NCBI GenBank assembly: GCA_047495785.1 | Contig: JBLDXI010000074.1 | Span: 1,550,001 to 1,614,000 of the forward strand | DNA length: 64,000 nt | DNA from: Lepidodermella squamata | Lineage: Eukaryota; Animalia; Gastrotricha | Direction: 5' to 3' | In this document: in pieces, positions 3,401-49,200 of the stretch | How positions within the stretch are numbered: position 1 is the stretch's first letter | Layout: every line of letters begins with the position of its first letter | Made by a program: the position numbers and the translations under genes | Notes under the pieces: generated by a model | What the model was told of the DNA's origin: nothing | Seen by the model: only the letters and a program-made list of their open reading frames with translations | Database searches by the model: none

Positions 3401-4007
3401 GATCTCAATATAGCCCCAAAAATCACCGTCCGCCTTAATTGACCCTCGATCAGACATTCGCCGATCAGATGGTAACTGATCGAAACGCAATGTGCGGCGA
3501 TAACTCGACAATTTGGCGTGACCGCTTATGATGATAGCGACCTGCAATGATGAATGCATGAATCCAAGAAGGCTGTTTTATTGAAAGCTAACAAGGATTC
3601 GCTCGCACCAGCTCATGTTCGACTTTAAAGCTCAAGCTTCGCATGCTGTTCGTCGTTGATCACCGGCAATTCATCTCCATTACCGGTGTTATCGTACCGA
3701 AAACGTGAGCACCGCACCCACCTGTAGCTTATTCGTTATTTTCTTCCTGTTTTTTCGATGTTTGCCGCGCGGCGGAGTTTTTCGTCGGTTGCCGAATTTG
3801 TGTTAGCCAGCCGCGGCAAAAACACGACGTATTGCAGGATCATTGCAGCAGGGTGGCAGTGATTGTTATTTGCGACGAGGCTGTATATGGGTGTTGGTAT
3901 AGGTAGGTATAGGTATAGGTGTGGCGCATATTTTAGCTCGCGCACCATCATTATTTATTCGCCACGCGACGGAATGAACGATGAAAATAACAACAGCTAA
4001 CAACCAA

Positions 4008-4038
<31 letters not shown>

Positions 4039-5354
4039 GGCTACTACGACGACGACGACGACGATTATCGCCGCCGCTGCTGCTGCTGCTGTGTTAATTT
4101 AATGGCCCACGCGTATAGGTAGTGTTTGACTGAACGCAGCAGGAAGCAGTCATCGAAGCAAGGCGAGGCAGTGTGACGCTCGTTACAAGGTCGTTATTTT
4201 GCAATCGCTGCTGTTTATTTGTGTTTTTATTTTGTGCGCGAGCACGACAACACGCCGTCGTGGCACCGCCATTACATGCCAGCAATCATACAAGCCGTAA
4301 TCACATCATCAGTCAACTGCGCGGCGTCAAAAAATCACCACCTCCAAACACAACAAACAGCAAACCGCCGCCGCCGCCGTAAATATCGCATTTTTGCACT
4401 TTTTCATCCTTCAACATCTTGCTTGCTTGCTTGCTTGCTGCTTAGGTATCGCTGCGGTGCCGAGGATGTTTCTTCTTTACATGACCTCGATTCGGTTGTT
4501 TTCTGCCGCGCGATTTCGCCTCTGCTGATGTTCGTTCACATGTTTACGCCACTTGTCCTCAGACACGATCGAGCATTTTTACTCTTGGCTTTTTATTACA
4601 GATATTTCTAAGATTCTAGACTGACCGATTTTTACGCTAACTGCAATTTGCAACGAACGTTAGACAACTCAGGCTGCCAAGCCCCAAGAAGCTTAAAACT
4701 ATGCGTAGAACCTTCGCAGAGTTGAGCATTTAGAGTAAACAACTTTTTTCGCTAGGCCTGTCTGCCAGGTACTTCTCATCATATTAGAAAAGCGCGTTAT
4801 TTTATAGCGGATAATCGGCGATTAAAACAGAAAGGTCATGCTTTAAGCCGCATTACATGGCCGCTGCTATCTTACTCAGTTTCAGTCGTATTTACACGTC
4901 GTTCTAGTGCATAAATTCTTCCTCCCTGCTGCCGAAAACCATTGTCTGCGGTTCATCGCGGTAGACGTTGATTCACGAATTCCATTCTTTGTCAAATGAA
5001 AAAGATGTTATTATATTACTTCAAGAACAGGTTTACCACCTTCCCTTCACACTCCTTATTGTACTCTGTGTTGATTCTACTACTGTTGTATCAACGCTCA
5101 CAAGTTTTGATAAACCGACAAAAACTAACTCTGCTATTTTAACATTTCTGCTATTTGTTGGTTTTCAACTTGCGGAAGAGTAATGAAATGCCTCATGGTA
5201 GTCTCACATTTGGCCAGAGGAATGTTCTAGGCTTGAGATTGTCAATTTTTTACACTATTATTTATACATTTTATTTCATATAGGCATTTAACAAAGAAGA
5301 CGCGTTTAGGCAAGACGTGAGACGGGAGAGTTGGCACTGTGCATCTCCCGAAAC

Positions 5355-11300: not shown

Positions 11301-14300
11301 CATATTAGCCTTTTGCCGTCGTGTGCTTGTGGTTTTTCTATCTCTTGGGCGTTGCTAAGGAATTATGCTGCCTGCGTGATTCTAACGTGTGCTTTTTTCT
11401 TTCTTGTTATAAAACAGCTGCTGGCTGCGGATCGCCGCCGAACATTGCGAACTCGCGCATCATCGAGATGTCGTTCCAGGGCAACGTGTCCCGCTTCGGC
11501 GACTTTGTAACCTACGAGTGCAAGGCTGGCTACGTCGCTCCAGGTTAGTTGCATATTACGTAATGTCTAACCTGTTGATTGTCTCCTTGTTTCATCGCAG
11601 GTGGAACTGAAGCGCTGGTGTCGAACTCGGCGAGCGGCGCATCGCAGTTCAGCGTCAAGTGCCTGCCGAACCAGGCGTGGTCGCAGCTGCCGAACGCGTG
11701 CGTCGCCGCGACGTCGTGCGGCGCCGCGCCGCTCGTCTCCAACGGCTTCGTCGTCGGCCAGTCGTTCGAGCGCGCCGACAGCCGGCCCGACGACCGCGTG
11801 CAGTACGACTGCACGGTCGGCTGGCGCATCGCCGGCACGCCCTACATCGTGTGCCTGCAGAACGGCCAGTGGACCCCGCCGCCCATGTGCACCCGCCAAG
11901 GTACTTACTTCACCAATTTATTTAGATTGATAGCTGATACCTATTGGTTATCGCTTTTCGTTACCTATGTTATTATCGGAGGCGCATGCGACATTACACA
12001 CATCACCTTCGTTATGCTCATTTTCGTTAGGTATATTTTAACTAAAATACTTGGTCATTTAAATTTGATTCGCAATTTTTAATAATAATGATCACGATTT
12101 CATTCTCATAATACTGGTCCACTACAGCGGAGATAAAGTTGCGCATGAACGCTGACGGTAGGAACGCCGCCGAGGACAGGAACGCCCTGTCATTCCCGGG
12201 ACGCAATCAAGGTTTGACAGTCACGTCCTAGTTAATACAGGCTTATAATATAGTGGTGTCTCGTTTTAATGTTGTGTTCTCATCACGAATGCGTGTCACC
12301 TTTCCGAACATTATTGGGGTGTTTTATTGGCGTTGGCTTTTGTAAATCAGCGAACGCAGTGGCTTTGCGCGGTGTTGATCATATCCATTTATCCATCGTG
12401 TGTTTGGAAGGCTTCAAAATACTTGCTTGGTGTCCTGCTCAACGCATCGCATTCTCATTTCGTGTTTTTTTATATAATGGGAATTTTATCCTAGACTCGG
12501 CACTTTGTTTGTTTTACCGTACATCATAGCTGTTTGTGGCCATAATATAGTTGTCATGTGATATTCTAACTTGCTGTTCTAATGATTTTGCAGGTGGAAC
12601 ATGTGGCCAAATACCAACCGTGCCGAACGCCGAGGTGTCATTCACGTCGATGCCAGCCGGGCAACCGGCGCAGGCCGGCCACGTCGTCTACTACCGGTGC
12701 CTGGACGCGTTCGAGCTGCAGGGCCCGGCCATGGTGCGCTGCACCGTCGACGGTGTGTGGTCGTCGCTGCCCGTGTGCCAGCCGGCCAACAACGGCCAGC
12801 CGCGCCCGCTCACCACGCAGCGCCCCAACGGCCAGGTGAGCGGCACGTCGTGCGGCCCGCCGCCCATCGTACCCCGCGCACTCCTGCTCGGCAACGTGCC
12901 GTCGCCGAGCCGCCCCGGCGACATCGTCACCTACGGCTGCGAGCCCGGCTACGAGTTCGACGCCGTGCGCTCCTACTCGGACCAGATCGCATGCGGCCCG
13001 GACGGCGCGTGGTCCCCACCGCCGGTGTGTCGCCAGTCGACGGGCGGACTCACGAACCGCCCTCCTCCTACCGCTGCCACCACGCAGCGCCCCGTGCAAC
13101 CGCCGCAGCAGTCCGGCTGCGGCCCGGCGCCCTCCGTCTCGTACGCGTCCATCGTCTCCGGCATCGTCGGCCCAACGAGTCGAGCCGGCGACGTCCTCAC
13201 GTTCGCGTGCCTGCCCGGCTTCGCCTTCGACACGGCGCGCTCCTTCTCCGACCAGGTCGTGTGCAGCCCGGACGGCCAGTGGTCGCCGTCGCCCGTCTGC
13301 CGCCCTGCCTCCGTCGTCCCGCCCACCAACTGGCCCGTCACGCTCAGCCCACCGCCGTCTGGCCGTTCTTGCGGCATCCCGCCATCGGTGCCGAACGCGC
13401 GCATTGTCGGCGGGTCGACGGGCCCCGGCCGGCCTGGGGACATCATCACGTACTCGTGCAACACCGGCTTCGAGTTCGACACGGCCCGTTCGTACTCGGA
13501 CCAGATCGTGTGCAATCCCGAAGGCGCGTGGTCACCGCCGCCAGTCTGTCGCCAGTCCGGCGGCGGCGGCGCTGTCATCCAGCCGACCAACTGGCCGGTG
13601 ACGCTGAACCCAGGGCCGGGCGGTCGGTCTTGCGGCGTGGCCCCGTCGATCCCGAACGCGCGAATCGCTGGCGGCTCAACGGGGCCCGGGCGCCAGGGCG
13701 ACATTGTGACGTACGCGTGCGTGGCTGGCTACGAATTCGACGCCGTGCGCTCGTACTCGGACCAGATCGTGTGCAACCCGGACGGGTCGTGGTCGACGCC
13801 GCCGGTGTGTCGCGCTGTCGCAGGCGGCAGCGGCGGATCGCAGGGCCAGCAGGGTGTGTGCGGCGCGGCGCCTCGCGTTCCCAACGCCCGCGTCGTCAAC
13901 GGGTTCTCGGGTCCGAGCCGGTCCGGCGACGTCGTGACGTTCGCGTGCGATCCCGGCTTCACCTTCGACACAGTTCGCTCGTACTCTGACCAGATCGTGT
14001 GTGGCCCAGACGGCGCGTGGTCCCCGCCACCCGTCTGCAAGTCCAGCAACGGCGGCGGCGGGCAGGTTACGTGGTGGCCGAACCAGCCGACGCCGTCGCC
14101 TGGGTCGGTGGCGACGGGCGGGTGTCCGGACACGCACCTAGTGGTGCTGGCCGACTTCCAGTGGTCGTCGTTCTTCCAGGACGCGGAGCTGGACGCGGCG
14201 CAGTCGATCCTGAAGGGCCTGCCGGGCGCGCTGATGGCGGCGATGGCGCGCAACGAGGTGCCGCTGCGGCGCATGAAGGTGACGCTGTCGACGACGCGCA

Positions 14301-14869
14301 TCTCGGCCATGTCGGCGTCGCAGCTGCTGAGCGGCGGCGGCAGCCTGTCGAGTCTGGCGGGCAGCGGGCAGGCGAGCGGCGGCTACGGCATCGCGCCCGC
14401 CTCCGTGCTCCTGAACCCGTCCGTGTCGGCGATGCCGGCGGACAAGGCGCAGTGGGACCGGTGGGTGGACTACAACGTGAAGACGTTCCTGTACCCGTTG
14501 TCGCGCGAACTCAGCTCGGCGCTGTACGACGTCGGCAACCGGTTGCTGGCGAACGACTCGGGCATCGAGGTGGACACGAGCGGGCGCGCGGCGTCGGGCA
14601 AGCCGGCGCGGCGCGTGCTCGTCGTCACGTCGGCGAACCGCGGCCAGTCGATCGTGGACGCGCACGACGCGGTGCGCGGCCTGCAGGCGGACGTGGGCGT
14701 GCTCGCCGTGACGCAGTACGTGCAGAGCCCGGTGCTGGCGCGCCTGCTGCGAAACAACATCGCCCTGCCGTCGTCCAACTTCGCGTACCTCGACACGATC
14801 GCGGCGCTGAAACAGGAGCTCGGCCACGACGGCCTCGGCGCCACCACGCGCAACCTGCTCTGCCTATAG
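5355..14869 (+). CDS. Large secreted multi-Sushi (CCP) protein, ~2250 aa, 12 coding exons: N-terminal beta-rich domain, 14 Sushi domains with Pro/Thr/Gln linkers, C-terminal degenerate vWA domain
   Basis: Exons read by GT-AG and frame continuity: 5355-6281, 6614-6821, 7189-7986, 8542-9246, 9456-9587, 9641-9991, 10046-10225, 10287-10370, 10511-11179, 11418-11543, 11601-11900, 12594-14869 (6756 nt, in frame). The C-G-x-P-P-x-V-x-N...G-D-x-V-x-Y-x-C-x-x-G-Y/F...C...G-x-W-S...C pattern recurs. A hydrophobic signal-like stretch (AVLVFAVAVVAAALL) lies in exon 1. The start codon is uncertain (5355 or ~5664). AATAAA at 15084. Confidence 0.85.
12594..14869 (+). CDS. Last exon of the Sushi gene: six Sushi domains (five are recent tandem duplicates) and a vWA-like domain
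   Basis: Five repeats share FDxxRS(Y/F)SDQ(I/V)xCxP(D/E)GxWSxxPVC. The tail GCPDTHLVVLAD...RRVLVVTS...VGVLAVT...LLCL follows the vWA strand/helix pattern with flanking Cys. Confidence 0.85.
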
Positions 14870-21480: not shown

Positions 21481-23255
21481 GGCATTCGTGAGGCTTTCAG
21501 TGTCATACTTGTCTTGGCGAATAATATGGGCATTCATTTCCCAAGTACCTCGATCAGTACTTATGGTTTCAGTTCTTAATATTGAATACTAATTGACAGC
21601 ATGCATGCACCGCAATACCGCAAGTATGACATAAGCTGACATCTGAGTTCATTATATCATACGTAATACAGGTCTTATTTCTCAAGTTCGAAGTTACACC
21701 AGTCCAGCCTTGATTGTCCGATATTGTTATTTTCTTCTTCACTCTCTCAACTTGCGTGTTTCAGCAAACTGCTTTTTGGCAATCTATTCATAGATATTCA
21801 CTTTTCCTAAGAAAATCAATGACATTGTTTTCGGTATGTGTTGCAGCTCCGGTACCTACTAATCATCTGGTTCAAAATGATGGATTCTGTGGTAAGGCAG
21901 TGAAACGCGCTGAACCAACATACAAATACAATACAATGTGTTTTATTGCTGTTAACCCAGTTGAATTAAGTCATTAACTAGTGGTAGATCGGTTATCATA
22001 TCAATTTCAGAGTAAACTAAATTACAAAAGCATGGGACAAGATAAGGCTAACGAGATGAGGCTAACAGAGAAACTCAAACACGCATCACACAGCTAATCG
22101 CACGTGGTGCGGCTGTTGCGAGGAACAACGTTTCTATAATTTTTGAAAATATATTTTTTATAATACAATAATAATTTAAACCATATTCAAATTGTATTAA
22201 AAAATAAAGTTGATAAACAGAAAATGATGATTGATCAGTTCCTCCAAAAAATCGCTTCGGAAAAAATCGGAAAGTCTGGCGATTTAAAGGTTCATGCTCG
22301 AGAGTGTCGCAAACGATGGCTTATCGGTTCTGAACTATTTAAGCTGCATTGGTGATACGTTGAGTCTTCTGTTGAGCAATATCGTGAGTTAAACCGACCT
22401 TCATTCGATAATTTGCGTTGCCTGTTGCCTCGGGCCATCACATTCGATCGATGTCGTTGGTCGAAGAAGTTGTGCGTAAGAAAACTGATTGGATACCTGC
22501 TCGCAACATCACTTTCCTTGATTTAGCGACTATCGAATATTTTATGTGCCTGGCTATGGCTATCTTATCGAACTCTGGACTCTGGACTTTGGACTTTGAC
22601 CCCTTACACTGGGCATCATGTAAACGTTGCTATGAGTTACACCAGGGTGGCCTGATCTTTGTGTTCACGTGACAGCTGGTGCTTATTCATTCAAGTAATG
22701 CGCATGTATTACAAATATCATCTCGAAGCTCGTTTTAAATTGAGATTCGAATTGCGTGGCATTACACTGTGTGGCGTACAGCATGCGCCCATTACTAGGG
22801 AAGAAATCGCGTGTTTTAAGCGAATTTTATTGTTTTATTTGCTCTAAGAATTTTCAATTTGAATTTAGGGTTAACTCCAATCCGCTCTGCCTTTTTTGTT
22901 TTGTTTCAGATATGATCGGGTTTAACGAGCTTTACTTCTCCCCTCTTTTAACTGTAGTTACGTGATCTAGAATCGAACAAGTACTTTCTACTTTTATATG
23001 CAAGAACAATGTTTATACTGCATAAAAACCTGATAATTTCTCTCCCGATACGCTTTGAATCAATCCTGATTTGAACCACTGACTATAAGTTGAGTCTTCA
23101 AGCATTGAATGTATGCTTTTTCAACACTTTAAGATTGTATGCTTTGGGAAAGACCCTTTCAGGCGTCTTAACTTCTGAATCGAACTATCCCTGTTTTTTG
23201 TTGATGCTAACTGACGTTGTTTAATATATAGGGCCTTCTTAATATTGTTGTGAAG

Positions 23256-24872
23256 ATGGCCTGTATTCCGGAATTTTTCGCATCCAAGAACATATTGATA
23301 ACAGGTGGCACCGGTTTTATCGGCAAGGTGCTCATCGAAAAGTTGTTGCGGTGTTGTAGTAAATTGGACAAAATCTACGTTGTTGTGCGGGCGAAAGGCA
23401 ATGCAAATGTGAAGGAACGCGAGAAGAAGTTTATTCAATGCAAAATCTTCGATCACCTACGCGGCCGTGACAACGTGTTGTCGAAGATTGTATTCCTGAG
23501 CGGCGACATTCAGCAGCCGGCGCTCGGGCTCAGCCAGGACGACATTGAACATTTGGCGGCCGTCGTCGACATAGTCTTTCACTGTGCTGCTACTGTAAAA
23601 TTCGACGAGCCTATCATGTGAGAATATACTCGTTCTACTTTGGGGTCATGCAATATAATTTTTTGTTCTACTACGAATAGGATTGCGCTACAGCAGAACG
23701 TAGGCGGCACGCTGGAGCTGATAAATCTGGTGAAGCGGTTCGCGCACCTGCAGTGCCTCGTGCACCTGTCGACGGCGTACGCGAACTGCGACCTGGCGCA
23801 CATCGAGGAACGGCTGTACCCGGTGGCGATGGACCCGCACAAAGTGCTGGAGCTGGCGTCGTGGATGCCGGAGGAGACGCTGACGAAGATGACGCCGGCG
23901 CTGATCGGGTCGAAGCCGAACACGTACACGTTCACGAAGCACCTCGCCGAAGTGTTGGTGGTGGCGGAGTCGCCGGTGCCGACGGCGATCGTGCGGCCGT
24001 CGATCGTGGGCGCGTCGTGGCGCGAGCCCTTCCCCGGCTGGATCGACAACCTGAACGGGCCGTCGGGCGTGTTCGTGGGCGCCGGCAAGGGCATCCTGCG
24101 CGGCATGCTCGTCGACCGGCACTGGCGCGCCGACATCGTGCCGGTGGACCTGCCGGTGAACCTGATGATCGCGAGCGCGTGGCACATGGCGTCGCAGCCG
24201 CGCACCGAACGCGTCTTCTACAACTGCACGGTGGACGAGGCGAACGCGTGCACGTGGGGCGAGATGGACGCGATCGTCAACTCGTACTTCGAGAAGACCC
24301 TCCCGCTCGAGAACGTGTACCGCTCGCCCAAGTGCCACCTGATGGAGAGCGAGTCGCAGTACGTGGTGCGGTCGTTCATCGGCCACCGGTTGCCAGCGCT
24401 CGTCGTCGACGCGGCGTGCCGGGCGGTGGGGCAGCGGCCGCGCCTGCGCTCGCTGTACGCGCGCGTCGAGAAGATGGTGTGGACGCTGCAGTACTTCGCG
24501 AAGGGCCACTGGGCGTGGACGCGGGCGAACGTGCGGCAGCTGCAGGCGCTGATGGCGACCGAGGACGCGCTCGTGTTCTACGTGCAGTACGACGCGTCGC
24601 TGTCGTGGCGCCAGTACCTGCACGACTTCTGCTTCGGCGTGAAGAAGTACCTGCTGGGCGAGGACTGTTCGGAGAAGCGCGTCGGCGAGCTGCGGGTGCG
24701 CATGCAGCGCGTCAAGGTGGCCTACGCCGCGCTCAAACTGCTCGCCGTGCTCGCGCTGTGGCGGTGGGTGGTGGGCGCGTTCGCGGGCGGGCGGCGCGTG
24801 CAGGCCGCCGCGCTCCGCCTCGCCTCGTTCCTCTTCAGCCTGTTGTCGCGCTTCTTCCTGCCCCTGCACTGA
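23256..24872 (+). CDS. FAR: Fatty acyl-CoA reductase (FAR, male-sterility family), 517 aa, two coding exons 23256-23617 and 23681-24872
   Basis: Rossmann motif TGGTGFIGK, HCAATVKFDE, STAYAN, catalytic YxxxK (PNTYTFTK), IVRPSIV..S..EPFPGW, and a C-terminal hydrophobic anchor. The 63-nt GT-AG intron joins FDEPI-M-IALQQNVGGT in frame. Confidence 0.95.
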
Positions 24873-27800: not shown

Positions 27801-28508
27801 ATGGAGATTGCGAAAATTTTTGAAACTAGCATGCTATCTATGCGTCACTTGCCAACTTGAAATTTTCCTCCACCTTGAAGAAGACGTGGATTTTCTAGTA
27901 AATTCGATCGAAAAACCAGCATCCTAGTAGGATGTTTAAGAGCTTTGACTTTCAGGGGATACAGAAATATAGCTCATCAATTCAATTCAGCTGTCGAATA
28001 ATTCAAGTACAGGATCAATCACCACCATCAGTTGAGATGATATTGTTGTAATGACTTGACAAGAAAAAAACCTGTGTCGTAAATGGCTGTTTGCGACCTG
28101 GCCAATCGCATCACTTTATTAGTTGCGACTTTGAAAACATTTCGGTTTTTCATTCGAAGCAAGAAGTATTTGCTGCTGAATCAACCAGCATCATCACCAC
28201 ACACGTATTGGAGGCAGAGAAGCAAGCGTCTCTGCCTGTCGATGCTGTTGATACAGATAGGTACATTTGTCGTAGGATCGCACGTGACATACACTAACTA
28301 AAGGCGTTGTTTAGTTGCAGAAGTATATAGCAGTAGTAAAAAGAACACTGAGTAGCGAAAACACAACAACTAGACAATGACGACGAAGACATTGTTCAAA
28401 TGAAACAGTTTCACAGGTGGATGGATGCGCGCGCGTGTTTTTCACAGGATGAGACTGACTGACTGACTGATCGTTCGTTCGATCGATCGATGAAGCAAGA
28501 GGAACCGG

Positions 28509-30695
28509 CTACAATTCTTCGCAGGCGAGTTCGCGCTCGTGCACCTGCGGCTGCTCGCTTTCGTTGTTGTTGTCGATGCCGAGTGGTGGCGAAGCAGCAG
28601 TTGCAGACGAAGAAGGGAGACCACCAGAAGTTGAAGGTGCGGCGGCTGCTGGGTTGTCGAAGACGCCGAGTGCAGGCACGCCCGACGCTGACGAAGACGA
28701 GATCACGTGATGCTGCCGGCTCGAAACAGCAGCAGCAGCGGAGGACGAGGCGGAGGCGGCGGCTAAGCTGTTGGCGAGGAGGACAGCGATGCCGGCAGGA
28801 GAAGCTGCTGCTGCCGATGGAGGAGACGCCGAAGAACCACCAGCGTACGTTGTCGTCGTCGTCAACCGCTTGTCTTTTTGCTGCAATAATCAATCAAAAG
28901 TCAGAAGTAAGGGAAAGCAGTAAAGCAAAGCAAAGCAAGGACTCACGCGTCTGTTGCAGAACCACACGCGGATGACTTCGCGCTCCATGGCGAGGTCGTT
29001 GGCGAGGCAGGCGATGTCGTCGCCGCTGGGCTTGGGCTGCCGCCGGAAGTAGTCCTCGAGCGCGTGCTTCGTCAGCTGGTCGATCGACGTGCGCTTCTTG
29101 CGCTTCCGCAGCGCCCACGTGTCCGCCAGCGAGAACCCACTAGCACCACCGTTTGTACTGCCAATCACCGTGTTGTTGTTGTTGTTGTTGTTCGCCGAGG
29201 AGGAGGACGAGCAGGCGAGAAGACCGCCGCCACCCGTGTTGTTCATCATGTGCAGCATGTCGGTGCCACTCGTACCAGTGGTGGTGGTGGTTGCAATGGC
29301 ACGGGTGAGCACGGCATCGCCAGCCGCCACCTCGGCATCCTCCATCCCATCGTCGTCGTCATCGTCGTCATCTAAATCTTCTTCCTGTTCGTCGTCCTCG
29401 TTGTGATCGTCGTCGGAAGGCGGCGACAACAGCACCTGTGCAGTCGTGGCACCCGCAGTCTTCGACAGGTCGTGCACCCGCGAGCACAAGTCCTCAGTCA
29501 CCGTCGTCGCCGTCGACGCAGCAGCAGCATTCGGTGATGATGCCGACGCATCGTTGTTGTCTACGCCGTGGTCGTCGTCGTCTTCATCGTTCGTCGGCGA
29601 GGACATGGCCGAGTGGCGGCGGCGCCGGCGAGTGCCCGTGCCGCCGACAGCCAGCAACGGCAGTCGCTGCTGCTGCACCGTCGACGAAGAGGCTGCTGCG
29701 CTCGTCGAATGCGACGGTACACCTGCTGCTGCTGCTGCTGCGGCTGGTGGTGGTTGTTGTTGTACGATGACATTGCTAGGCGACAGTAGACTCAGCGGCA
29801 GTTGTTGCTGAAGATGGCTGGCAGTGGCAATGGCGGCGGTCGAAGTCGAAGTCTGTGGCGGCGACTTGCCATTGCCATTGCTGCCGTTGGTGGCTGTCCA
29901 CTGCAGGGCCTCGTGCAGCCACCGCTCGAGCATCGGCTTCAACTTGCACATGTTCTTGTAGGACAGATTAAGCGCCTCGAACCGCGAAATGGTCGTCTGC
30001 GAAAAGTCGTTGCCGTACATCTTGCCCATGGCGGCGCCGACGTCGCCCTGCGTGCAGCCCAGCTCGATGCGCCGCCGCTTGAACTCGCGCGTGAACCGCT
30101 CCAGCTCGTCCAGCGCCACGTCCTCGTCGACGGCCGGCAGCGGCAACGCACCACCGCCTCCGCTACTCGTTGTTGTTGTCAGTGATGGCACAACAGTAGA
30201 AGCAGTAGGCTTGTCTGCTTGGGCTTTACTCGCAGCAAATGCTGACGATGTGACTGGTTTGTGGTGGTTCTGGCGAGATACACTCAACTGTTGCTGTTTC
30301 GAAGCCGACTCGTGCTCACTACTACTGACATCTAGCTGTTGCTGTTGCTGCTGCTGTTGTAGCTTGATGAGTCCGCTCGAACCGGCGGCGGCCGACTGCA
30401 GCAGCAGTTGCTGCAACTGCGCCGTCGTCAGCAACACGACCGGCTGCGAGAAGTTGATCAACTGCTGCGATGGCGACATCGAACTGCCGCCGCCGCCGCC
30501 ACCGCTCGTCGCCATCGTCAACACCACCGGCATGCTCGTCGCAGCAGACGGCGATTCACCAGCCGCTGCCTGCATGGCCGGCTTGAGCACGTGCTGCCCG
30601 CCCGTCACCTGCGCCATCAACGCCTGAATCTGCTCGACCACCGACGACGGCAACTGAGCCTGCTGAGCCTGCGCCTGCGACTGCTCCATCATCAT
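28509..30695 (-). CDS. POU2: Class II POU-domain transcription factor (Oct1/Oct2/nubbin-pdm type); exons ~30695-28947 and 28880-28509
   Basis: The POU-specific domain [58 protein letters not shown] carries class II residues ([18 protein letters not shown]). The homeodomain RKRKKRTSI...[11 protein letters not shown] is completed across a 66-nt GTGAGT..AG intron as QKDKR. Further upstream exons are possible. Confidence 0.92.
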
Positions 30696-30957
30696 GATTA
30701 CAATCCAAGCTAGCTCGAACTCTCTCTCTCTCTCACACAGACTCACACACAAGTTAATACATCATCTATGAAAAGAAAAAAACAAAACATATTAGGGAGG
30801 GAAATTACTGAACAAAGTGCCGAACACGAGGCATTTACATTCTGCCTGTTTGTCGTATATTGCAATATTCTGTTAGCTGCCGCTGCTGCTGCTGCTAATG
30901 ACAAAAATGGCATCATGCAGCTCTACGAACGACGTATGCATTATGCACAAGCAAGTA

Positions 30958-31491
30958 ATTTGCATGATGTGATCTGCGACTCGACTCTGCATCGACCGAC
31001 CGACCGACCGACCGCATGTCTGCGAAGACTAGCGAGCGAGCGAACGAGTGAATTTGCAAATGCACATACATACATACATGCTTGCATACTTGCATACATA
31101 AACATCATCAGAAGAGTAGGCTCTCATTTGCATATTACAATCACATGCGCACATCCATGAACACAGCCAGCTCGTTTTATTCTGAACTCGCTCGCTTATT
31201 ATCACCGCCTGCGAATACTTACTACCTACTAATACTACTCCTACTAATCAATTCAGCACGCTCGCCACATTTGCATCTCATTATCCTTCTCATGTATGCA
31301 TGTGCGCAGCTCATCAGCTCATTACTAAGCAAGCACCGCACGCACGTTCGCAATATGCAAATTTCATCAATACATGAAAATTTCGAAAGCGCCTACGTAT
31401 CCAAAAAACTCCTGGCTCTGCGTTATCACACGATAAATTACTATGCAGTCCACGAATATACCCAAAATCATAATAATAATAATATGCAAAT
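30958..31491. promoter_or_regulatory. Cluster of five perfect octamer motifs (ATGCAAAT/ATTTGCAT) upstream of the POU2 coding region
   Basis: ATTTGCAT at 30958, 31126 and 31269; ATGCAAAT at 31355 and 31484; a near-match ATTTGCAAAT at 31052. Confidence 0.75.
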
Positions 31492-31735
31492 GGACCGCGC
31501 ACATACAAACCACGCATACAGATATACCATAAAACCTGACTCTTTCTCTCTTTCGTTAGTGAAAGTCAGCGGATAGTAGTGAAAAATTCGCGAAAACTGA
31601 CTTGAAAGTGAGATGCAACGAAATCAAGGACCTGGACCACGAAATTTATCAGATCTTGCAATTTTCTTTCTTTCTTTCCTTCACACGCCATTTGAAGAAC
31701 ACATTGACTCCGATTCAACAGCTGAAAATATTCTA

Positions 31736-32149
31736 CCGTCAACTGGGGTGACTTTAGCTGGTGGGGCGACTTTGACATGCTAAAAAGGGGCGACGTTAGC
31801 ATAGCAAATCTCGAAGATAGCCTGCCTCATACCCCCTGTGTGGGGTACCGTCATTGATAGCCGGCATAAAGGGCAGCCCGAATATGACAGAGTTGACTCA
31901 TTTCGATCCTACCTGCTTAACTGCGGAGTCATCGAAATTTTGTTATAAACCGAATTTTCTCTGTCTTGAATCATCAGGTAAGGCAACCGATTGACGTCTA
32001 GTATAGAATGCATGCCTTTTCTAGGGCTATCTAACGGTACCCCACTCAAGGGGTATAAGCCAGGCTACCTTCGAAATTCGCTATGCTAAAGTCGCCCCAT
32101 TTTGACATGCCAAAATCGCCCCACCAGCCAAAGTCACGCCAGTTGACGG
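31736..32149. mobile_element. MITE with ~125-bp imperfect TIRs and TA TSD (Tc1/mariner-pogo type)
   Basis: TA|CCGTCAACTGGGGTGACTTTAGCTGGTGGGGCGAC... mirrors ...GCCCCACCAGCCAAAGTCACGCCAGTTGACGG|TA. The arms stay complementary to about 31860/32025. Confidence 0.9.
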
Positions 32150-33201
32150 TACCTGCCTTCTTTGATCTTTGAAAATGATGGAGGGAATTCGGATTCAGCT
32201 GTCTTCAGATCGTGATCACTGTTTGATACAGCCTCTACAGAAATGGACGAACGCTCTTTCAATCTTTCCTCTTCTGCGGATGCGAATACTACTCCCTATG
32301 AACACTGACGCTATTTTCTGAGAAAAATGAGAAATTTCGTACCAAAGGACTAGCTTATAAACACTTCAAAACACGATGAGGAATAAAAAATAAAAAATCT
32401 ATATCAGACGTGCCAAGCGATTTCGGCCATATCTCAATCCTCCATCTTCACAAGCATGTTAAAAGGCAATGCACAGTGGCGGAGATGTCAAATCTGTGGA
32501 GGGGGTGCCAAGGGTTCAGGGGCGACACTCAAGAAGTATATTTAGGGGCGCCACTTACCGAGTTTAGCAGTCTCTGTTTTTACTGCATTGTATATGAAAG
32601 GCACCCAGGAGACCCAAAAAATGGAAAAGTTGTCTTATACACTGAAAAACGTTGGAAATAACACATTATTGCATTACAATTTGTTATGGCTAAGCAACAC
32701 AGTTATATTCAGCATGAAATCTATAAATTGGAACATTTTGGCCACTGAAAATTGATGAATTTTGGGGGCGAAAACCAAAAAAACTAAAGGGGAGACCCTT
32801 TTATGCTGCTTCTATCTTTATTTCTTTCCTCTTTCCTCTTTCGTGGAGGCGGTCTGGGTTAGCGCGCAAACCCCCCGTTTAAATTAGAATTATGAATTAA
32901 ATTATATTGCATAATTTTTATTTTGCTCACGCGCGTCAAATAATATAATAATATATGTTACGAATTTTCGCCCCATTTGGCGCGGCCTTTTGAATGAAGC
33001 TGAGTGAGTGGAAAAGCCACCTGGGCACTAATGCCTGGGCCCTGGAGAAACAGTCAGCAATAACTGGAGTACCAGGGGTAGGGATTTCAATTATGTAGTT
33101 ATTAAACCAGTTCAAACTTTCCTAGAGCGTAAGCTCGCGATTTTCTCACAAGCTCCGCCTTATGGTGAAAGCTTGAGTCCGTCAGGGCGAGGAGAAATCG
33201 T

Positions 33202-33229
33202 AAATCCTGATCCTGATCCTGATCCTGAT
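33202..33229. repeat. (ATCCTG)n hexamer microsatellite
   Basis: aaatcctgatcctgatcctgatcctgat. Confidence 0.9.
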
Positions 33230-33393
33230 GGCCCTGCAACCGCGCCGCCGCAGCATCCTGAGGTGGGTGTTATTAGCGCGCGTATGTAAATTCAGCCCAC
33301 ACCAGGAATTGCTGACCTGCAACATGTACTTATCGGTGTAGTGCGCTATCTTTGGTGATTATTTATCAAGTACCAGCTGCATTATATATTCAT

Positions 33394-33613: not shown

Positions 33614-34583
33614 CTTGCACTTCGCTATTTAAGTTTCAAGCTCAGCTTAAAGTCGCCTCCTCAAGTTCCGTTGGTAGAAGTGCGCCCTCAGAGGGCCTCG
33701 CTCTCAGATGGCTGAGAGGGCACCCCACCCCCCAACCTAACCCTAACTCTAAACCCTGACCCTAAAACTAACCCTAAACCTAACCTGAACCTTAATCTTG
33801 ACCGTCTGATCCATCTGAGCGATCCATCTGAGAGCGCACTTCTACCAACGATATTGGAAACGGCTTAAAATTAGCTCAGCGTATTTACACCTTAGCCTAG
33901 CGTACAAACTCAACTTGTTATAGCTGAAGCCAGCTACCTTATCAATCTCATCTTACTATCGACCAGGATAAGCTGAGCTGAGAAATTGAGCGTAGTAGAA
34001 TATTGAGTACCGGAATACTGTATACGCGATAATTTTCGTGAGTAGATTATTTTCGCGAAGGCCTTAAGATGAGCGGTAGACACTATTTGCGAGTGGAAAT
34101 TTTCGCGATCAAGCCTTCTGTGAACGGAAAATCGGGATATTCGGAAAATCATTCAAGAGATGTCGTTAGCGACGCGCCAAAACAACCACTTAACTATTTA
34201 TAGCTTTTTTTTTTATGGAAAGTACGTTCGACTCTTGAACGTAAATTCAAATTACGATGAGTACGATCAGTGCTCAAAAAGCCGAACGTACTCCTTCTTT
34301 ACGTTCGGCTCGTCAAAGTACTATCGAATGAGTCATCGAAGTGGTTGTTTTGGCGCATCGCTAACGATGTACTTATTTGCTGATGTTGAACACGCTGAGC
34401 TGGTTTGTCTTTGTCTATCGTCTTCAGTTCAGCTAGTCAGCTGAGCTTATTAATGACACTATGAAGTTAAGCTGACAAGCTGAGCTGAGCAGGTTATCTA
34501 ATCAGTTGAGCTTAGCTGAGCTTGTTCATGGTTTAGCTGAGCTGACTTCAGATGAGCTTATTATTTAAATAACGAAGTGCAAG
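33614..34583. mobile_element. MITE-like element with 19-bp TIRs and subterminal (AGCTGAGC/GCTCAGCT) repeats
   Basis: CTTGCACTTCGCTATTTAA (33614) and TTAAATAACGAAGTGCAAG (to 34583) are inverted with one mismatch. The TSD is unclear. Confidence 0.65.
33669..33850. mobile_element. Small nested inverted-repeat element enclosing degenerate telomere-like (CCCTAA/CCTAA)n repeats
   Basis: Perfect 17-bp inverted repeat CGTTGGTAGAAGTGCGC / GCGCACTTCTACCAACG. The core 33733-33795 reads caacctaaccctaactctaaaccctgaccctaaaactaaccctaaacctaacc. Confidence 0.75.
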
Positions 34584-43230: not shown

Positions 43231-46200
43231 AAATTCAAGTGCAATGTGTAACTTAGTGGAACCAACGAATCCACAAAATCACCCTTGTGAGCATCGCCAC
43301 GAATCGGCATCGTGCCCAAACCAGCCGATTCGGGCATTTTCGCGCTTCATTGGTTAGTGGCAGCAAGCGCAAACGCGTTGGCAGGCTATTCGCGGCCATT
43401 GCAGCTGACCGGTATTCCGCTGCCAGCCAAAGAATGCTGGAATCGCTGTATCCACCCTTGTACGCATCGCCACGAATCGGCATCGTGCCCAAACCAGCCG
43501 AATCGGGCAAATTCGCGCTTCATTCGGTAGTGGCAGCAAGCGCAAACGCGTTGGCAGGCTATTCGCGGCCATTGCAGCTGACCGGTATTCCGCTGCCAGC
43601 CACAGAAGGCTGGAATCGCTGTATTCACCCTTGTACGCATCGCTACGAATCGGCATCGTGCCCAAACCACTCGATTCGGGCATTTTCGCGCTTCATTCGT
43701 TAGTGGCAGCAAGCGCAAACGCGTTGGCAGGCTATTCGCGGCCATTGCAGCTGACCGGTATTCCGCTGCCAGCCACAGAAGGCTGGAATCGCTGTATCCA
43801 CCCTTGTACGCATCGCTACGAATCGGCATCGTGCCCAAACCAGCCGATTCGGGCATATTCGCGCTTCATTCGGTAGCGGCAGCAAGCGCAAACGCGTTGG
43901 CAGGCTATTCGCGGCCATTGCAGCTGACCGGTATTCCGCTGCCAGCCAAAGAATGCTGGAATCGCTGTATTCACCCTTGTAGGCATCGCCACGAATCGGC
44001 ATCGTGCCCAAACCAGCCGATTCGGGCATTTTCGCGCTTCATTCGTTAGTGGCAGCAAGCGCAAACGCGTTGGCAGGCTATTCGCGGCCATTGCAGCTGA
44101 CCGGTATTCCGCTGCCAGCCAAAGAATGCTGGAATCGCTGTATCCACCCTTGTACGCATCGCCACGAATCGGCATCGTGCCCAAACCAGCCGATTCGGGC
44201 ATTTTCGCGCTTCATTCGTTAGTGGCAGCAAGCGCAAACGCGTTGGCAGGCTATTCGCGTCCATTGCAGCTGACCCGTATTCCGCTGCCAGCCACAGAAG
44301 GCTGGAATCACTGTATTCACCCTTGTACGCATCGCTACGAATCGGCATCGTGCCCAAACCAGCCGAATCAGGCATATTCGCGCTTCATTCGGTAGCGGCA
44401 GCAAGCGCAAACGCGTTGGCAGGCTATTCGCGGCCATTGCAGCTGACCGGTATTCCGCTGCCAGCCAAAGAATGCTGGAATCGCTGTATTCACCCTTGTA
44501 GGCATCGCCACGAATCGGCATCGTGCCCAAACCAGCCGATTCGGGCATTTTCGCGCTTCATTCGTTAGTGGCAGCAAGCGCAAACGCGTTGGCAGGCTAT
44601 TCGCGGCCATTGCAGCTGACCGGTATTCCGCTGCCAGCCACAGAAGGCTGGAATCACTGTATTCACCCTTGTACGCATCGCTACGAATCGGCATCGTGCC
44701 CAAACCAGCCGAATCGGGCATATTCGCGCTTCATTCGGTAGTGGCAGCAAGCGCAAACGCGTTGGCAGGCTATTCGCGGCCATTGCAGCTGACCGGTATT
44801 CCGCTGCCAGCCAAAGAATGCTGGAATCGCTGTATCCACCCTTGTACGCATCGCCACGAATCGGCATCGTGCCCAAACCAGCCGATTCGGGCATTTTCGC
44901 GCTTCATTCGTTAGTGGCAGCAAGCGCAAACGCGTTGGCAGGCTATTCGCGGCCATTGCAGCTGACCGGTATTCCGCTGCCAGCCAAAGAATGCTGGAAT
45001 CGCTGTATTCACCCTTGTACGCATCGCCACGAATCGGCATCGTGCCCAAACCAGCCGATTCGGGCATTTTCGCGCTTCATTTGTTAGTGGCAGCAAGCGC
45101 AAACGCGTTGGCAGGCTATTCGCGTCCATTGCAGCTGACCCGTATTCCGCTGCCAGCCACAGAAGGCTGGAATCGCTGTATTCACCCTTGTACGCATCGC
45201 TACGAATCGGCATCGTGCCCAAACCAGCCGATTCGGGAATATTCGCGCTTCATTCGTTGGTGGCAGCAAGCGCAAACGCGTTGGCAGGCTATTCGCGGCC
45301 ATTGCAGCTGACCGGTATTCCGCTGCCAGCCAAAGAATGCTGGAATCGCTGTATCCACCCTTGTACGCATCGCCACGAATCGGCATCGTGCCCAAACCAG
45401 CCGATTCGGGCATTTTCGCGCTTCATTCGTTAGTGGCAGCAAGCGCAAACGCGTTGGCAGGCTATTCGCGGCCATTGCAGCTGACCGGTATTCCGCTGCC
45501 AGCCAAAGAATGCTGGAATCGCTGTATTCACCCTTGTACGCATCGCCACGAATCGGCATCGTGCCCAAACCAGCCGATTCGGGCATTTTCGCGCTTCATT
45601 TGTTAGTGGCAGCAAGCGCAAACGCGTTGGCAGGCTATTCGCGTCCATTGCAGCTGACCCGTATTCCGCTGCCAGCCACAGAAGGCTGGAATCGCTGTAT
45701 TCACCCTTGTACGCATCGCTACGAATCGGCATCGTGCCCAAACCAGCCGAATCGGGCAAATTCGCGCTTCATTCGTTAGTGGCAGCAAGCGCAAACGCGT
45801 TGGCAGGCTATTCGCGGCCATTGCAGCTGACCGGTATTCCGCTGCCAGCCAAAGAATGCTGGAATCGCTGTATTCACCCTTGTACGCATCGCCACGAATC
45901 GGCATCGTGCCCAAACCAGCCGATTCGGGCATTTTCGCGCTTCATTCGTTAGTGGCAGCAAGCGCAAACGCGTTGGCAGGCTATTCGCGGCCATTGCAGC
46001 TGACCGGTATTCCGCTGCCAGCCAAAGAATGCTGGAATCGCTGTATTCACCCTTGTACGCATCGCTACGAATCGGCATCGTGCCCAAACCAGCCGATTCG
46101 GGAATATTCGCGCTTCATTCGTTGGTGGCAGCAAGCGCAAACGCGTTGGCAGGCTATTCGCGGCCATTGCAGCTGACCGGTATTCCGCTGCCAGCCACAG

Positions 46201-49200
46201 AAGGCTGGAATCGCTGTATTCACCCTTGTACGCATCGCTACGAATCGGCATCGTGCCCAAACCACCCGATTCGGGAATATTCGCGCTTCATTCGTTGGTG
46301 GCAGCAAGCGCAAACGCGTTGGCAGGCTATTCGCGGCCATTGCAGCTGACCGGTATTCCGCTGCCAGCCACAGAAGGCTGGAATCGCTGTATCCACCCTT
46401 GTACGCATCGCTACGAATCGGCATCGTGCCCAAACCAGCCGAATCGGGCATATTCGCGCTTCATTCGGTAGTGGCAGCAAGCGCAAACGCGTTGGCAGGC
46501 TATTCGCGGCCATTGCAGCTGACCGGTATTCCGCTGCCAGCCAAAGAATGCTGGAATCGCTGTATTCACCCTTGTACGCATCGCTACGAATCGGCATCGT
46601 GCCCAAACCAGCCGAATCGGGCATATTCGCGCTTCATTCGGTAGTGGCAGCAAGCGCAAACGCGTTGGCAGGCTATTCGCGGCCATTGCAGCTGACCGGT
46701 ATTCCGCTGCCAGCCACAGAAGGCTGGAATCACTGTATTCACCCTTGTACGCATCGCTACGAATCGGCATCGTGCCCAAACCAGCCGAATCAGGCATATT
46801 CGCGCTTCATTCGGTAGCGACAGCAAGCGCAAACGCGTTGACAGGCTATTCGCGGCCATTGCAGCTGACCGGTATTCCGCTGCCAGCCAAAGAATGCTGG
46901 AATCGCTGTATTCACCCTTGTACGCATCGCTACGAATCGGCATCGTGCCCAAACCAGCCGAATCAGGCATATTCGCGCTTCATTCGGTAGCGGCAGCAAG
47001 CGCAAACGCGTTGGCAGGCTATTCGCGGCCATTGCAGCTGACCGGTATTCCGCTGCCAGCCAAAGAAGGTTGGAATCGCTGTATTCACCCTTGTACGCAT
47101 CGCCACGAATCGGCATCGTGCCCAAACCAGCCGATTCGGGCATTTTCGCGCTTCATTCGTTAGTGGCAGCAAGCGCAAACGCGTTGGCAGGCTATTCGCG
47201 GCCATTGCAGCTGACCGGTATTCCGTTGCCAGCCAAAGAATGCTGGAATCGCTGTATTCACCCTTGTACGCATCGCCACGAATCGGCATCGTGCCCAAAC
47301 CAGCCGAATCAGGCATATTCGCGCTTCATTCGGTAGCGGCAGCAAGCGCAAACGCGTTGGCAGGCTATTCGCGGCCATTGCAGCTGACCGGTATTCCGCT
47401 GCCAGCCACAGAAGGCTGGAATCGCTGTATCCACCCTTGTACGCATCGCTACGAATCGGCATCGTGCCCAAACCAGCCGAATCGGGCATATTCGCGCTTC
47501 ATTCGGTAGTGGCAGCAAGCGCAAACGCGTTGGCAGGCTATTCGCGGCCATTGCAGCTGACCGGTATTCCGCTGCCAGCCAAAGAATGCTGGAATCGCTG
47601 TATTCACCCTTGTACGCATCGCTACGAATCGGCATCGTGCCCAAACCAGCCGAATCGGGCATATTCGCGCTTTATTCGGTAGTGGCAGCAAGCGCAAACG
47701 CGTTGGCAGGCTATTCGCGGCCATTGCAGCTGACCGGTATTCCGCTGCCAGCCAAAGAATGCTGGAATCGCTGTATTCACCCTTGTACGCATCGCCACGA
47801 ATCGGCATCGTGCCCAAACCAGCCGATTCGGGCATTTTCGCGCTTCATTCGTTAGTGGCAGCAAGCGCAAACGCGTTGGCAGGCTATTCGCGGCCATTGC
47901 AGCTGACCGGTATTCCGCTGCCAGCCAAAGAATGCTGGAATCGCTGTATTCACCCTTGTACGCATCGCCACGAATCGGCATCGTGCCCAAACCAGCCGAT
48001 TCGGGCATTTTCGCGCTTCATTCGTTAGTGGCAGCAAGCGCAAACGCATTGGCAGGCTATTCGCGGCCATTGCAGCTGACCGGTATTCCGCTGCCAGCCA
48101 AAGAATGCTGGAATCGCTGTAGTCACCCTTGTACGCATCGCCACGAATCGGCATCGTGCCCAAACCAGCCGATTCGGGCATTTTCGCGCTTCATTGGTTA
48201 GTGGCAGCAAGCGCAAACGCGTTGGCAGGCTATTCGCGGCCATTGCAGCTGACCGGTATTCCGCTGCCAGCCAAAGAATGCTGGAATCGCTGTATTCACC
48301 CTTGTACGCATCGCCACGAATCGGCATCGTGCCCAAACCAGCCGAATCGGGCATATTCGCGCTTCATTCGGTAGTGGCAGCAAGCGCAAACGCGTTGGCA
48401 GGCTATTCGCGGCCATTGCAGCTGACCGGTATTCCGCTGCCAGCCACAGAAGGCTGGAATCGCTGTATCCACCCTTGTACGCATCGCTACGAATCGGCAT
48501 CGTGCCCAAACCACCCGATTCGGGCATTTTCGCGCTTCATTCGTTAGTGGCAGCAAGCGCAAACGCGTTGGCAGGCTATTCGCGGCCATTGCAGCTGACC
48601 GGTATTCCGCTGCCAGCCAAAGAATGCTGGAATCGCTGTATTCACCCTTGAAGGCATCGCCACGAATCGGCATCGTGCCCAAACCAGCCGATTCGGGCAT
48701 TTTCGCGCTTCATTCGTTAGTGGCAGCAAGCGCAAACGCGTTGGCAGGCTATTCGCGGCCATTGCAGCTGACCGGTATTCCGCTGCCAGCCAAAGAAGGT
48801 TGGAATCGCTGTATTCACCGTTGTACGCATCGCCACGAATCGGCATCGTGCCCAAACCAGCCGATTCGGGCATTTTCGCGCTTCATTCGTTAGTGGCAGC
48901 AAGCGCAAACGCGTTGGCAGGCTATTCGCGGCCATTGCAGCTGACCGGTATTCCGCTGCCAGCCAAAGAATGCTGGAATCGCTGTATTCACCCTTGTACG
49001 CATCGCCACGAATCGGCATCGTGCCCAAACCAGCCGATTCGGGCATTTTCGCGCTTCATTCGTTAGTGGCAGCAAGCGCAAACGCGTTGGCAGGCTATTC
49101 GCGGCCATTGCAGCTGACCGGTATTCCGCTGCCAGCCAAAGAATGCTGGAATCGCTGTATTCACCCTTGTACGCATCGCCACGAATCGGCATCGTGCCCA

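What the first reader, a model, noticed from the sequence alone, without database searches (positions are those of the whole stretch)
30958..31491. Five perfect octamer sites directly upstream of an octamer-binding POU2 gene: candidate autoregulatory module
Seen: ATTTGCAT at 30958, 31126 and 31269 and ATGCAAAT at 31355 and 31484, within 534 bp and 0.26-0.8 kb 5' of the POU2 ATG, plus near-matches. An 8-mer on both strands is expected well under once in such a span. Established: ATGCAAAT is the canonical site of class II POU proteins. Inference: this is a homotypic autoregulatory enhancer or promoter. The spaced sites in both orientations may relate to this protein's very long linker.
Basis: partly seen in the sequence, partly recalled or inferred. 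Interest (0 to 1): 0.75.

Follow-up and report, generated by a model that had tools for sequence, protein, structure and literature searches.

The report
Octamer site cluster upstream of POU2 gene
Five perfect binding sites for an Oct-type (class II POU) transcription factor sit just upstream of the gene for such a factor and are partly conserved in a related species, so the gene probably helps control its own expression, a circuit already known for other POU genes.

Summary
The window holds seven perfect octamers (ATGCAAAT on either strand). Five of them lie in 534 bp, 263-796 bp upstream of the ATG (30695, minus strand) of an expressed, spliced class II POU gene.

- **Not chance:** 0 of 20,000 local dinucleotide shuffles reach five sites. 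The octamer ranks first of 840 composition-matched 8-mers in this stretch.
- **Not a repeat:** the flanks are unrelated and the stretch is single-copy in a DNA run.
- **Conserved:** the one related species I could find (a syntenic ortholog on a metagenome contig) has three perfect octamers 206-367 bp upstream of its ATG. The only significant alignment between the two upstream regions is a 43-bp block built around one octamer.
- **Best reading:** a selectively maintained, POU-responsive cluster of identical sites in the promoter or a proximal enhancer, probably autoregulatory. Input from another POU factor cannot be excluded without binding data.
- **Long-linker idea:** not supported.
- **Transcription start:** not mapped. 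Earlier notes of this scan suggest the animal is a gastrotrich that trans-splices a leader onto its mRNAs.
- **Novelty:** POU gene autoregulation through octamers (Oct-1, pou5f3, POU3F4) and a functional Oct-site cluster read by Drosophila Nubbin are published. This is a new member of a known kind, of moderate-to-low interest.

The scan has not noted this cluster on other DNA.

The parts
30958..30965 (-). Perfect octamer 1. It reads ATGCAAAT on the gene's sense strand and lies 263-270 bp upstream of the ATG.
31126..31133 (-). Perfect octamer 2, sense relative to the gene. Its extended 12-mer, at window 31125-31136, is identical to L001 1426-1437 and lies in the same order after the conserved block. 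It is probably the orthologous site.
31269..31276 (-). Perfect octamer 3, sense relative to the gene, inside the conserved non-coding block.
31355..31362 (+). Perfect octamer 4, antisense relative to the gene. No positional counterpart in the relative.
31484..31491 (+). Perfect octamer 5, antisense relative to the gene, 789-796 bp upstream of the ATG.
31242..31284 (-). A 43-bp conserved non-coding block: octamer 3 plus an 18-bp downstream motif. It is the only significant alignment between the upstream regions of the window and of the related species (L001 1379-1421; 86% identity, E 2e-8).
31052..31095 (.). A patch of one-mismatch octamer-like sites (31052, 31054, 31060, 31088), partly inside an ACAT microsatellite.
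28947..30695 (-). POU2 gene exon 1, 583 codons. It encodes a Q-rich N-terminus, the POU-specific domain (aa 195-263), a linker of about 266 aa, and the homeodomain from aa 530 up to CNRR.
   Evidence: RNA-like contigs of run X2 cover it.
28881..28946 (-). A 66-nt GT..AG intron inside the homeodomain.
   Evidence: Sequence. Spliced contigs in runs X2 and X3 skip exactly 28881-28946.
28509..28880 (-). POU2 gene exon 2 (QKDKR ... stop). The whole protein is about 706 aa.

Best explanation
The 534-bp stretch is a cluster of identical transcription-factor sites that has been kept by selection. It acts as a cis-regulatory module (proximal promoter or enhancer) for the adjacent class II POU gene, and it works by recruiting POU-domain protein to five high-affinity monomer octamers plus several weaker sites.

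The most likely reader is the gene's own product. In that case the module closes an autoregulatory loop. I guess a positive, expression-maintaining loop, because the protein has a glutamine-rich N-terminus like Oct-type activators.

**Shown:** the sites, their statistical excess, their single-copy state, expression and splicing of the gene, its class II identity with conserved DNA-contact stretches, and conservation of an octamer cluster and of one octamer-centred block in a related species.

**Inferred:** that the protein binds these sites, that it is this protein and not another POU factor, the sign of the feedback, and that the module lies upstream of the transcription start.
For: - **Excess over chance:** five of the window's seven perfect octamers lie in 534 bp. 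None of 20,000 local shuffles reaches 5. The octamer ranks 1 of 840 composition-matched 8-mers here and 312 elsewhere in the window. It is the only 8-mer reaching 5 copies per 534 bp that is not an obvious simple-repeat word.
- **Independent sites:** the flanks are unrelated and no tandem or dispersed repeat carries them. Depth in DNA run X1 is single-copy, about 67, against more than 1,000 on the neighbouring MITE-like element.
- **Nearest gene:** no RNA family and no Pfam-bearing ORF lies between the cluster and 38 kb, so the POU gene is the nearest gene.
- **The gene is real and class II:**
- **Conservation:** the syntenic ortholog P0001/L001 is 54% identical overall with a near-identical POU-specific domain, and the same fatty-acyl-CoA reductase gene lies downstream. 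It has three perfect and two one-mismatch octamers 206-367 bp upstream of its ATG. The only significant upstream alignment is the octamer-centred 43-bp block. ATGCAA, ATGCAAA and ATGCAAAT are the top repeated k-mers shared by the two upstream regions.
- **Precedents:** Oct-1 is autoregulated through two octa-sites (Pankratova 2006, as cited in PMC6057458 and PMC5100579). pou5f3 has a positive loop (PMC12199784). POU3F4 drives its own promoter (PMC10296620). A cluster of six Oct sites at -336 to -150 of Drosophila CecA1 is needed for Nubbin action (PMC5851638).
Against: - There are no binding, occupancy or reporter data.
- The octamer is also bound by other POU classes (POU3F4 in PMC10296620), so cross-regulation fits equally well.
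- The transcription start is unmapped. RNA-like contigs stop near the ATG and none lies on 30761-31548, but coverage is low and these are contigs, not reads. Earlier notes of this scan suggest the animal trans-splices a leader onto its mRNAs, so the cluster could lie in a discarded outron.
- Conservation rests on a single related species. L001 and L002 are the same species: they are identical over 400-1634.
- Genome-wide octamer-cluster frequency could not be computed, because only 64 kb was available.
- Polymorphism is uninformative: 3 SNPs and 1 indel in 1 kb, none in an octamer.
Confidence: 0.55

Rival explanations
1. Cross-regulation. The cluster is a functional POU-responsive module, but the protein that occupies it in vivo is another POU factor, such as a second class II paralog or a class III factor. 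The gene is then a downstream target and is not self-regulated.
For: All the evidence for function applies equally. Octamers are also recognised by other POU classes (PMC10296620; Vvl octamer-type sites in PMC3390367). This protein is a divergent class II member with lineage-specific substitutions in the POU-specific domain and an unusually long linker, which could alter its binding.
Against: The DNA-contacting stretches are intact. Self-regulation is the recurrent pattern for POU genes in the literature. No other POU gene of this genome was available for comparison.
Confidence: 0.28
2. The octamers act as general promoter elements, or serve another target or process than the POU gene. Examples would be a distal gene on the + strand, or chromatin or replication functions of an Oct-1-like factor.
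For: Oct-type factors also drive housekeeping promoters (PMC5100579). The transcription start and the enhancer's target are unmapped.
Against: No snRNA or other RNA gene lies nearby, and no recognisable gene lies within about 7 kb on the other side. The cluster keeps its position next to the same gene in the relative.
Confidence: 0.1
3. Chance or composition. The sites arose from AT-rich, microsatellite-rich intergenic DNA or from a repeat, and have no function.
For: The region is rich in microsatellites. Three sites share a short AT-rich 5' flank (AAT).
Against: None of 20,000 local shuffles reaches 5. The octamer ranks 1 of 840 composition-matched 8-mers. The flanks are unrelated and depth is single-copy. 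A cluster recurs upstream of the ortholog, where the DNA is otherwise unalignable.
Confidence: 0.04

Closest known systems
Autoregulation of mammalian Oct-1 (POU2F1) through two octa-sites in its alternative promoter (Pankratova et al. 2006, Biochimie; known to me only as cited in PMC6057458 and PMC5100579)
   Same: A class II POU gene carries canonical octamers in its own promoter region, giving a self-regulatory circuit.
   Different: There are five perfect sites plus near-matches here instead of two. The animal is an invertebrate, probably a gastrotrich. Nothing has been tested experimentally and the sign of the regulation is unknown.
Oct-site cluster of the Drosophila CecA1 proximal promoter, read by the Nubbin isoforms (PMC5851638)
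   Same: A cluster of about six Oct or Oct-like sites within about 200-550 bp, close to the start of a gene, read by an invertebrate class II POU factor.
   Different: That cluster controls an immune effector gene, not the POU gene itself. It mixes consensus and Oct-like sites, whereas here five are perfect.
Positive autoregulatory loops of other POU classes: zebrafish pou5f3 with Sox3 (PMC12199784) and POU3F4/Brain-4 (PMC10296620)
   Same: Octamer-type sites upstream of the POU gene, bound by its own product, maintain expression.
   Different: These are other POU classes. The pou5f3 loop depends on adjacent Sox sites, and no conserved Sox-Oct composite is seen here. One ATTGT lies 3 bp from octamer 2 but is absent in the relative.

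Membership tests
Class II POU transcription factor (POU2F / Oct-1 / nubbin-pdm), the neighbouring gene | A bipartite POU domain: a POU-specific domain followed by a POU homeodomain. | tested here: met
   Pfam Pou at 1.3e-33 (aa 195-263) and Homeodomain at 1.4e-14 (aa 532-583).
Class II POU transcription factor (POU2F / Oct-1 / nubbin-pdm), the neighbouring gene | Closer to class II than to the other POU classes. | tested here: met
   The best named relatives are all POU2F or nubbin. The best solved chains are POU2F3, POU2F2 and POU2F1, ahead of classes III, I, V and VI. No phylogenetic tree was built.
Class II POU transcription factor (POU2F / Oct-1 / nubbin-pdm), the neighbouring gene | The DNA-contacting stretches of the Oct-1/octamer complex are conserved (SQTTISRFE in the POU-specific domain; [10 protein letters not shown] in the homeodomain). 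| tested here: met
   Alignment to POU2F3 and exon 2 beginning QKDKR. Which residues contact DNA is taken from my own knowledge of the Oct-1 structure.
Class II POU transcription factor (POU2F / Oct-1 / nubbin-pdm), the neighbouring gene | A short flexible linker of roughly 20-30 aa between the two subdomains. | tested here: not met
   The linker is about 266 aa here (aa 264-529) and about 115 aa in the relative. The protein is an atypical class II member.
Homotypic cluster of transcription-factor binding sites (Oct-site cluster type) | Three or more sites for one factor within a few hundred bp, in excess of what composition predicts. | tested here: met
   Five perfect sites in 534 bp. None of 20,000 shuffles reaches 5. 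Rank 1 of 840 matched 8-mers.
Homotypic cluster of transcription-factor binding sites (Oct-site cluster type) | The sites are independent, not copies of one repeat unit. | tested here: met
   Unrelated flanks, no repeat family, single-copy depth.
Autoregulatory element of a POU gene | Cognate sites lie in the gene's own regulatory DNA, next to its transcription start. | tested here: inconclusive
   The sites lie 263-796 bp 5' of the ATG and no RNA-like contig covers them. The start is unmapped, however, and trans-splicing is possible in this animal.
Autoregulatory element of a POU gene | The sites are conserved in related species. | tested here: met
   One related species has three perfect octamers at -206 to -367 and shares an octamer-centred 43-bp block. 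No second relative was found.
Autoregulatory element of a POU gene | The gene's own protein occupies the sites, and the gene's output depends on it. | not testable with these tools
   Needs EMSA, DAP-seq or ChIP, together with reporter or knock-down assays.

The most novel reading that the evidence does not exclude
Dense groups of perfect octamers may be a general and ancient feature of class II POU loci in invertebrates, a conserved self- or cross-regulatory kernel, and not a quirk of this lineage.

In six unrelated class II POU loci fetched from other animals (95.9 kb), the octamer occurs 26 times against a mean of 4.8 for composition-matched 8-mers, which is rank 4 of 840. The top word is the overlapping TATGCAAA. 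Five of the six loci have a pair or trio within 250 bp. No non-POU control loci from those animals were available, so the enrichment could simply reflect developmental-gene neighbourhoods.
Probability: 0.3. Interest if true: 0.55.

Novelty: new member of a known kind. Interest (0 to 1): 0.35.

Why it matters
It gives a concrete, easily testable cis-regulatory prediction in a phylum where essentially nothing is known about gene regulation; earlier notes of this scan suggest Gastrotricha. A 0.9-kb fragment with five identical high-affinity sites can be tested by EMSA and by a reporter assay, together with a matching conserved block in a second species. It would also extend the self-regulation theme of POU genes to a divergent, long-linker class II member. 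It does not change how POU genes are understood to work.

Tried and rejected
- **Repeat or transposon origin:** rejected. The flanks are unrelated, the repeat finder and TRF show nothing beyond the octamers themselves, and depth is single-copy.
- **An snRNA or histone-type promoter or other RNA gene nearby:** an Rfam scan of 26-36 kb found only a sub-threshold mir-297 hit in a CA-rich microsatellite.
- **A divergent protein gene as the target:** ORFs out to 38 kb have no Pfam family.
- **POU dimer sites (MORE, PORE):** none found. There is only a MORE+1-like palindrome with one mismatch at 30936.
- **More related species:**
  - The JGI metagenome scan gave six distant POU genes, five without any octamer and one with a single octamer downstream of the gene.
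  - A second protein search with the N-terminal profile found no further ortholog. Its runner-up, P0121, is a different protein with two POU-specific domains.
  - L002 proved to be the same species as L001.
- **Polymorphism as a test of constraint:** there are too few variants to say anything.
- **Mapping the transcription start from public runs:** only contigs were available. They stop near the ATG without a leader.
- **Genome-wide octamer-cluster background:** not possible, because only this window is readable. The scan's notes mention no other octamer cluster.
- **A low-depth X1 joint, 30751 to 31662:** it would skip the whole cluster, but I set it aside as a probable CT-repeat artefact. 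Its ends are non-canonical, one side is only 21 nt and the depth is 3.9.

Full report
**Observation.** The five perfect octamers are at the stated coordinates. ATTTGCAT is at 30958, 31126 and 31269. ATGCAAAT is at 31355 and 31484. The 64-kb window holds only seven, against 6.28 expected from dinucleotide shuffles, so the window as a whole is not octamer-rich, yet five fall in 534 bp. From one search's background rate I expect about 0.05 sites in such a span. By my own Poisson arithmetic, P(5 or more) is about 3e-9 per span and below 1e-5 after allowing for all spans.

Shuffling the local 1 kb, which keeps its AT-rich composition and even the octamers' own letters, gives a mean of 0.18 sites, and none of 20,000 shuffles reaches 5. 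To allow for the freedom of choosing a motif, I scanned every canonical 8-mer in 1-40000. Only five reach 5 non-overlapping copies in 534 bp. Two of the other four are trinucleotide-repeat words, and two are GC-rich or closely packed words that I did not examine. Among the 840 8-mers with the same base content, the octamer ranks first in 30696-31700 and 312th in the rest of the non-satellite window. One-mismatch sites are also present.

**Not a repeat.** Oriented flanks of the five sites are unrelated, apart from a short AAT 5' preference in three of them and a 3' G in three. The repeat finder and TRF report nothing that carries the sites. In DNA run X1, which is the same species and 99+% identical, the stretch 30761-31548 has the single-copy contig depth of about 67. 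The MITE-like element at 31734-32151 and a repeat at 32928-33321 reach about 1,200 to 14,500.

**The gene.** The neighbouring gene is on the minus strand.
- Exon 1 runs 30695..28947 and has 583 codons.
- A 66-nt GT..AG intron follows at 28946..28881.
- Exon 2 runs 28880..28509.

Contigs of runs X2 and X3 skip exactly 28881-28946, so those runs contain spliced RNA and the gene is expressed. Pfam finds a Pou domain (aa 195-263) and a Homeodomain (aa 532-583). The best named relatives are all POU2F or nubbin proteins. The best solved chains are POU2F3, POU2F2 and POU2F1, ahead of the other classes, and the SQTTISRFE and RVWFCNRR stretches are intact. The linker is about 266 aa, which is far longer than usual. 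The octamers therefore lie 263-796 bp 5' of the ATG. The three proximal sites are in sense orientation relative to the gene and the two distal sites are antisense.

**Surroundings.** X2's RNA-like contigs cover 28200-30697 and none lies on 30761-31548. This fits a non-transcribed, or transcribed and then discarded, upstream region. It is weak evidence, because these are low-depth contigs. No Rfam family lies in 26-36 kb, and no Pfam-bearing ORF lies between the cluster and 38 kb. The POU gene is thus the nearest gene. Earlier notes of this scan (s1-421969, s1-422687; not checked here) suggest the animal is a gastrotrich that trans-splices a leader onto its mRNAs. A strong pyrimidine tract plus AG sits at 30766-30790, so the mature 5' end need not mark the transcription start.

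**Related species.** A word-based protein search found one close relative, P0001. It is 54% identical over the N-terminal 260 aa, has a near-identical POU-specific domain and shares lineage-specific substitutions. It lies on metagenome contig L001 with the same fatty-acyl-CoA reductase gene downstream, so it is a syntenic ortholog.

L001 has four perfect octamers in 8.8 kb. Three of them, all in sense orientation, lie 206, 248 and 367 bp upstream of the ATG, and two one-mismatch sites lie between them. In L001's upstream 1.6 kb the octamer again ties for first of 840 matched 8-mers, and it is unremarkable in the rest of the contig.

A sensitive blastn of the two upstream regions gives one significant hit only: a 43-bp block at window 31242-31284 and L001 1379-1421, 86% identical, E 2e-8. 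It consists of octamer 3 and an 18-bp motif nine bases downstream. The next site downstream shares a 12-mer in both species (window 31125-31136; L001 1426-1437), in the same order and orientation. The remaining sites have no positional counterpart, which looks like site turnover within a maintained cluster. An unbiased comparison shows ATGCAA, ATGCAAA and ATGCAAAT as the top repeated k-mers shared by the two upstream regions. L002 is the same species as L001, being identical from 400 to 1634, and adds nothing. No further ortholog was found in JGI metagenomes or with an N-terminal profile search.

**Mechanism.** The evidence supports a selectively maintained cluster of high-affinity monomer octamers that acts on the adjacent POU gene. 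Each perfect octamer holds the half-sites for both POU subdomains side by side (established; PMC5100579, PMC5851638). No MORE or PORE dimer elements are present. I therefore expect independent or additively cooperating monomers.

That the occupant is the gene's own protein is an inference. It rests on the intact DNA-contact residues and on the recurrence of self-regulation among POU genes:
- Oct-1, through two octa-sites (Pankratova 2006, as cited in PMC6057458 and PMC5100579);
- pou5f3 (PMC12199784);
- POU3F4 (PMC10296620).

The closest architectural precedent is the cluster of six Oct sites at -336 to -150 of Drosophila CecA1, which the Nubbin isoforms need for repression and activation (PMC5851638). 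A positive loop is my guess, based on the Q-rich N-terminus, and it is untested. Cross-regulation by another POU factor is the main rival and cannot be separated by sequence.

**The linker idea.** It is not supported. Canonical octamers need no long linker. The relative's linker is less than half as long (about 115 aa), and its three sites are all in one orientation. The spacings (168, 143, 86 and 129 bp) show no regularity.

**Wider look (exploratory).** Six other class II POU loci from unrelated invertebrates (L010 is Capitella; L011 and L014-L017 are from metagenomes; 95.9 kb in all) hold 26 perfect octamers. The mean for composition-matched 8-mers is 4.8, and the octamer ranks 4 of 840. 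The overlapping TATGCAAA is the top word, and five of the six loci have a pair or trio within 250 bp. Six short, distant POU contigs have only one octamer between them, downstream of the gene. Without non-POU control loci from those animals, this remains a lead.

**Verdict.** This is a new member of a known kind and of moderate-to-low interest.

Noticed in passing
L010, L011, L014-L017 (other class II POU loci): Perfect octamers are about 5-fold more frequent than composition-matched 8-mers (26 against a mean of 4.8; rank 4 of 840; TATGCAAA is the top word). They often sit in tight groups upstream of the POU ORF, for example three within 600 bp in L011 and three within 170 bp in L017. No non-POU control was available.
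   Followed up: partly
window 29109-29910; L001 2355-2700: [quoted passage not shown] It is an evolutionarily labile, low-complexity insert.
   Followed up: partly
window 31734-32151: A MITE-like element with 118-nt inverted arms that are 87% complementary. Its summed contig depth in DNA run X1 is about 1,250 against about 70 for single-copy DNA. It lies directly distal to the octamer region.
   Followed up: partly
window 32928-33321: A very high-copy repeat, with summed contig depth of 6,000-14,500 in X1. It is also present in the RNA-like run X2.
   Followed up: no
window 33734-33792: A degenerate interstitial run of CCTAAC units, the complement of TTAGGG. It has about 8-10 copies at 70-76% matches.
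   Followed up: no
window 30766-30790 (minus strand): A long pyrimidine tract ending in AG, 70 nt upstream of the ATG. It looks like a 3' splice or trans-splice acceptor. RNA-like contig coverage vanishes at about this point. This is relevant if the animal uses spliced leaders, as earlier notes of this scan suggest.
   Followed up: no
L009 186-908 (protein P0121): A marine metagenome contig encodes a 240-aa protein with two tandem POU-specific domains followed by one homeodomain, which is an unusual POU architecture.
   Followed up: no
window 30936-30948: ATGCATTATGCAC, a MORE-like palindrome with a 1-bp spacer and one mismatch. It lies 10 bp from the proximal octamer and is not conserved in L001.
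   Followed up: partly
window 23250-24872 (+); L001 5138-6742 (-): A fatty-acyl-CoA reductase gene (NAD_binding_4 plus Sterile domains) lies downstream of the POU gene in both species. This conserved synteny supports orthology.
   Followed up: partly
window 44001-64000: GC content (0.57) and GC skew are almost constant over 20 kb, consistent with the satellite array that other notes of this scan describe.
   Followed up: no
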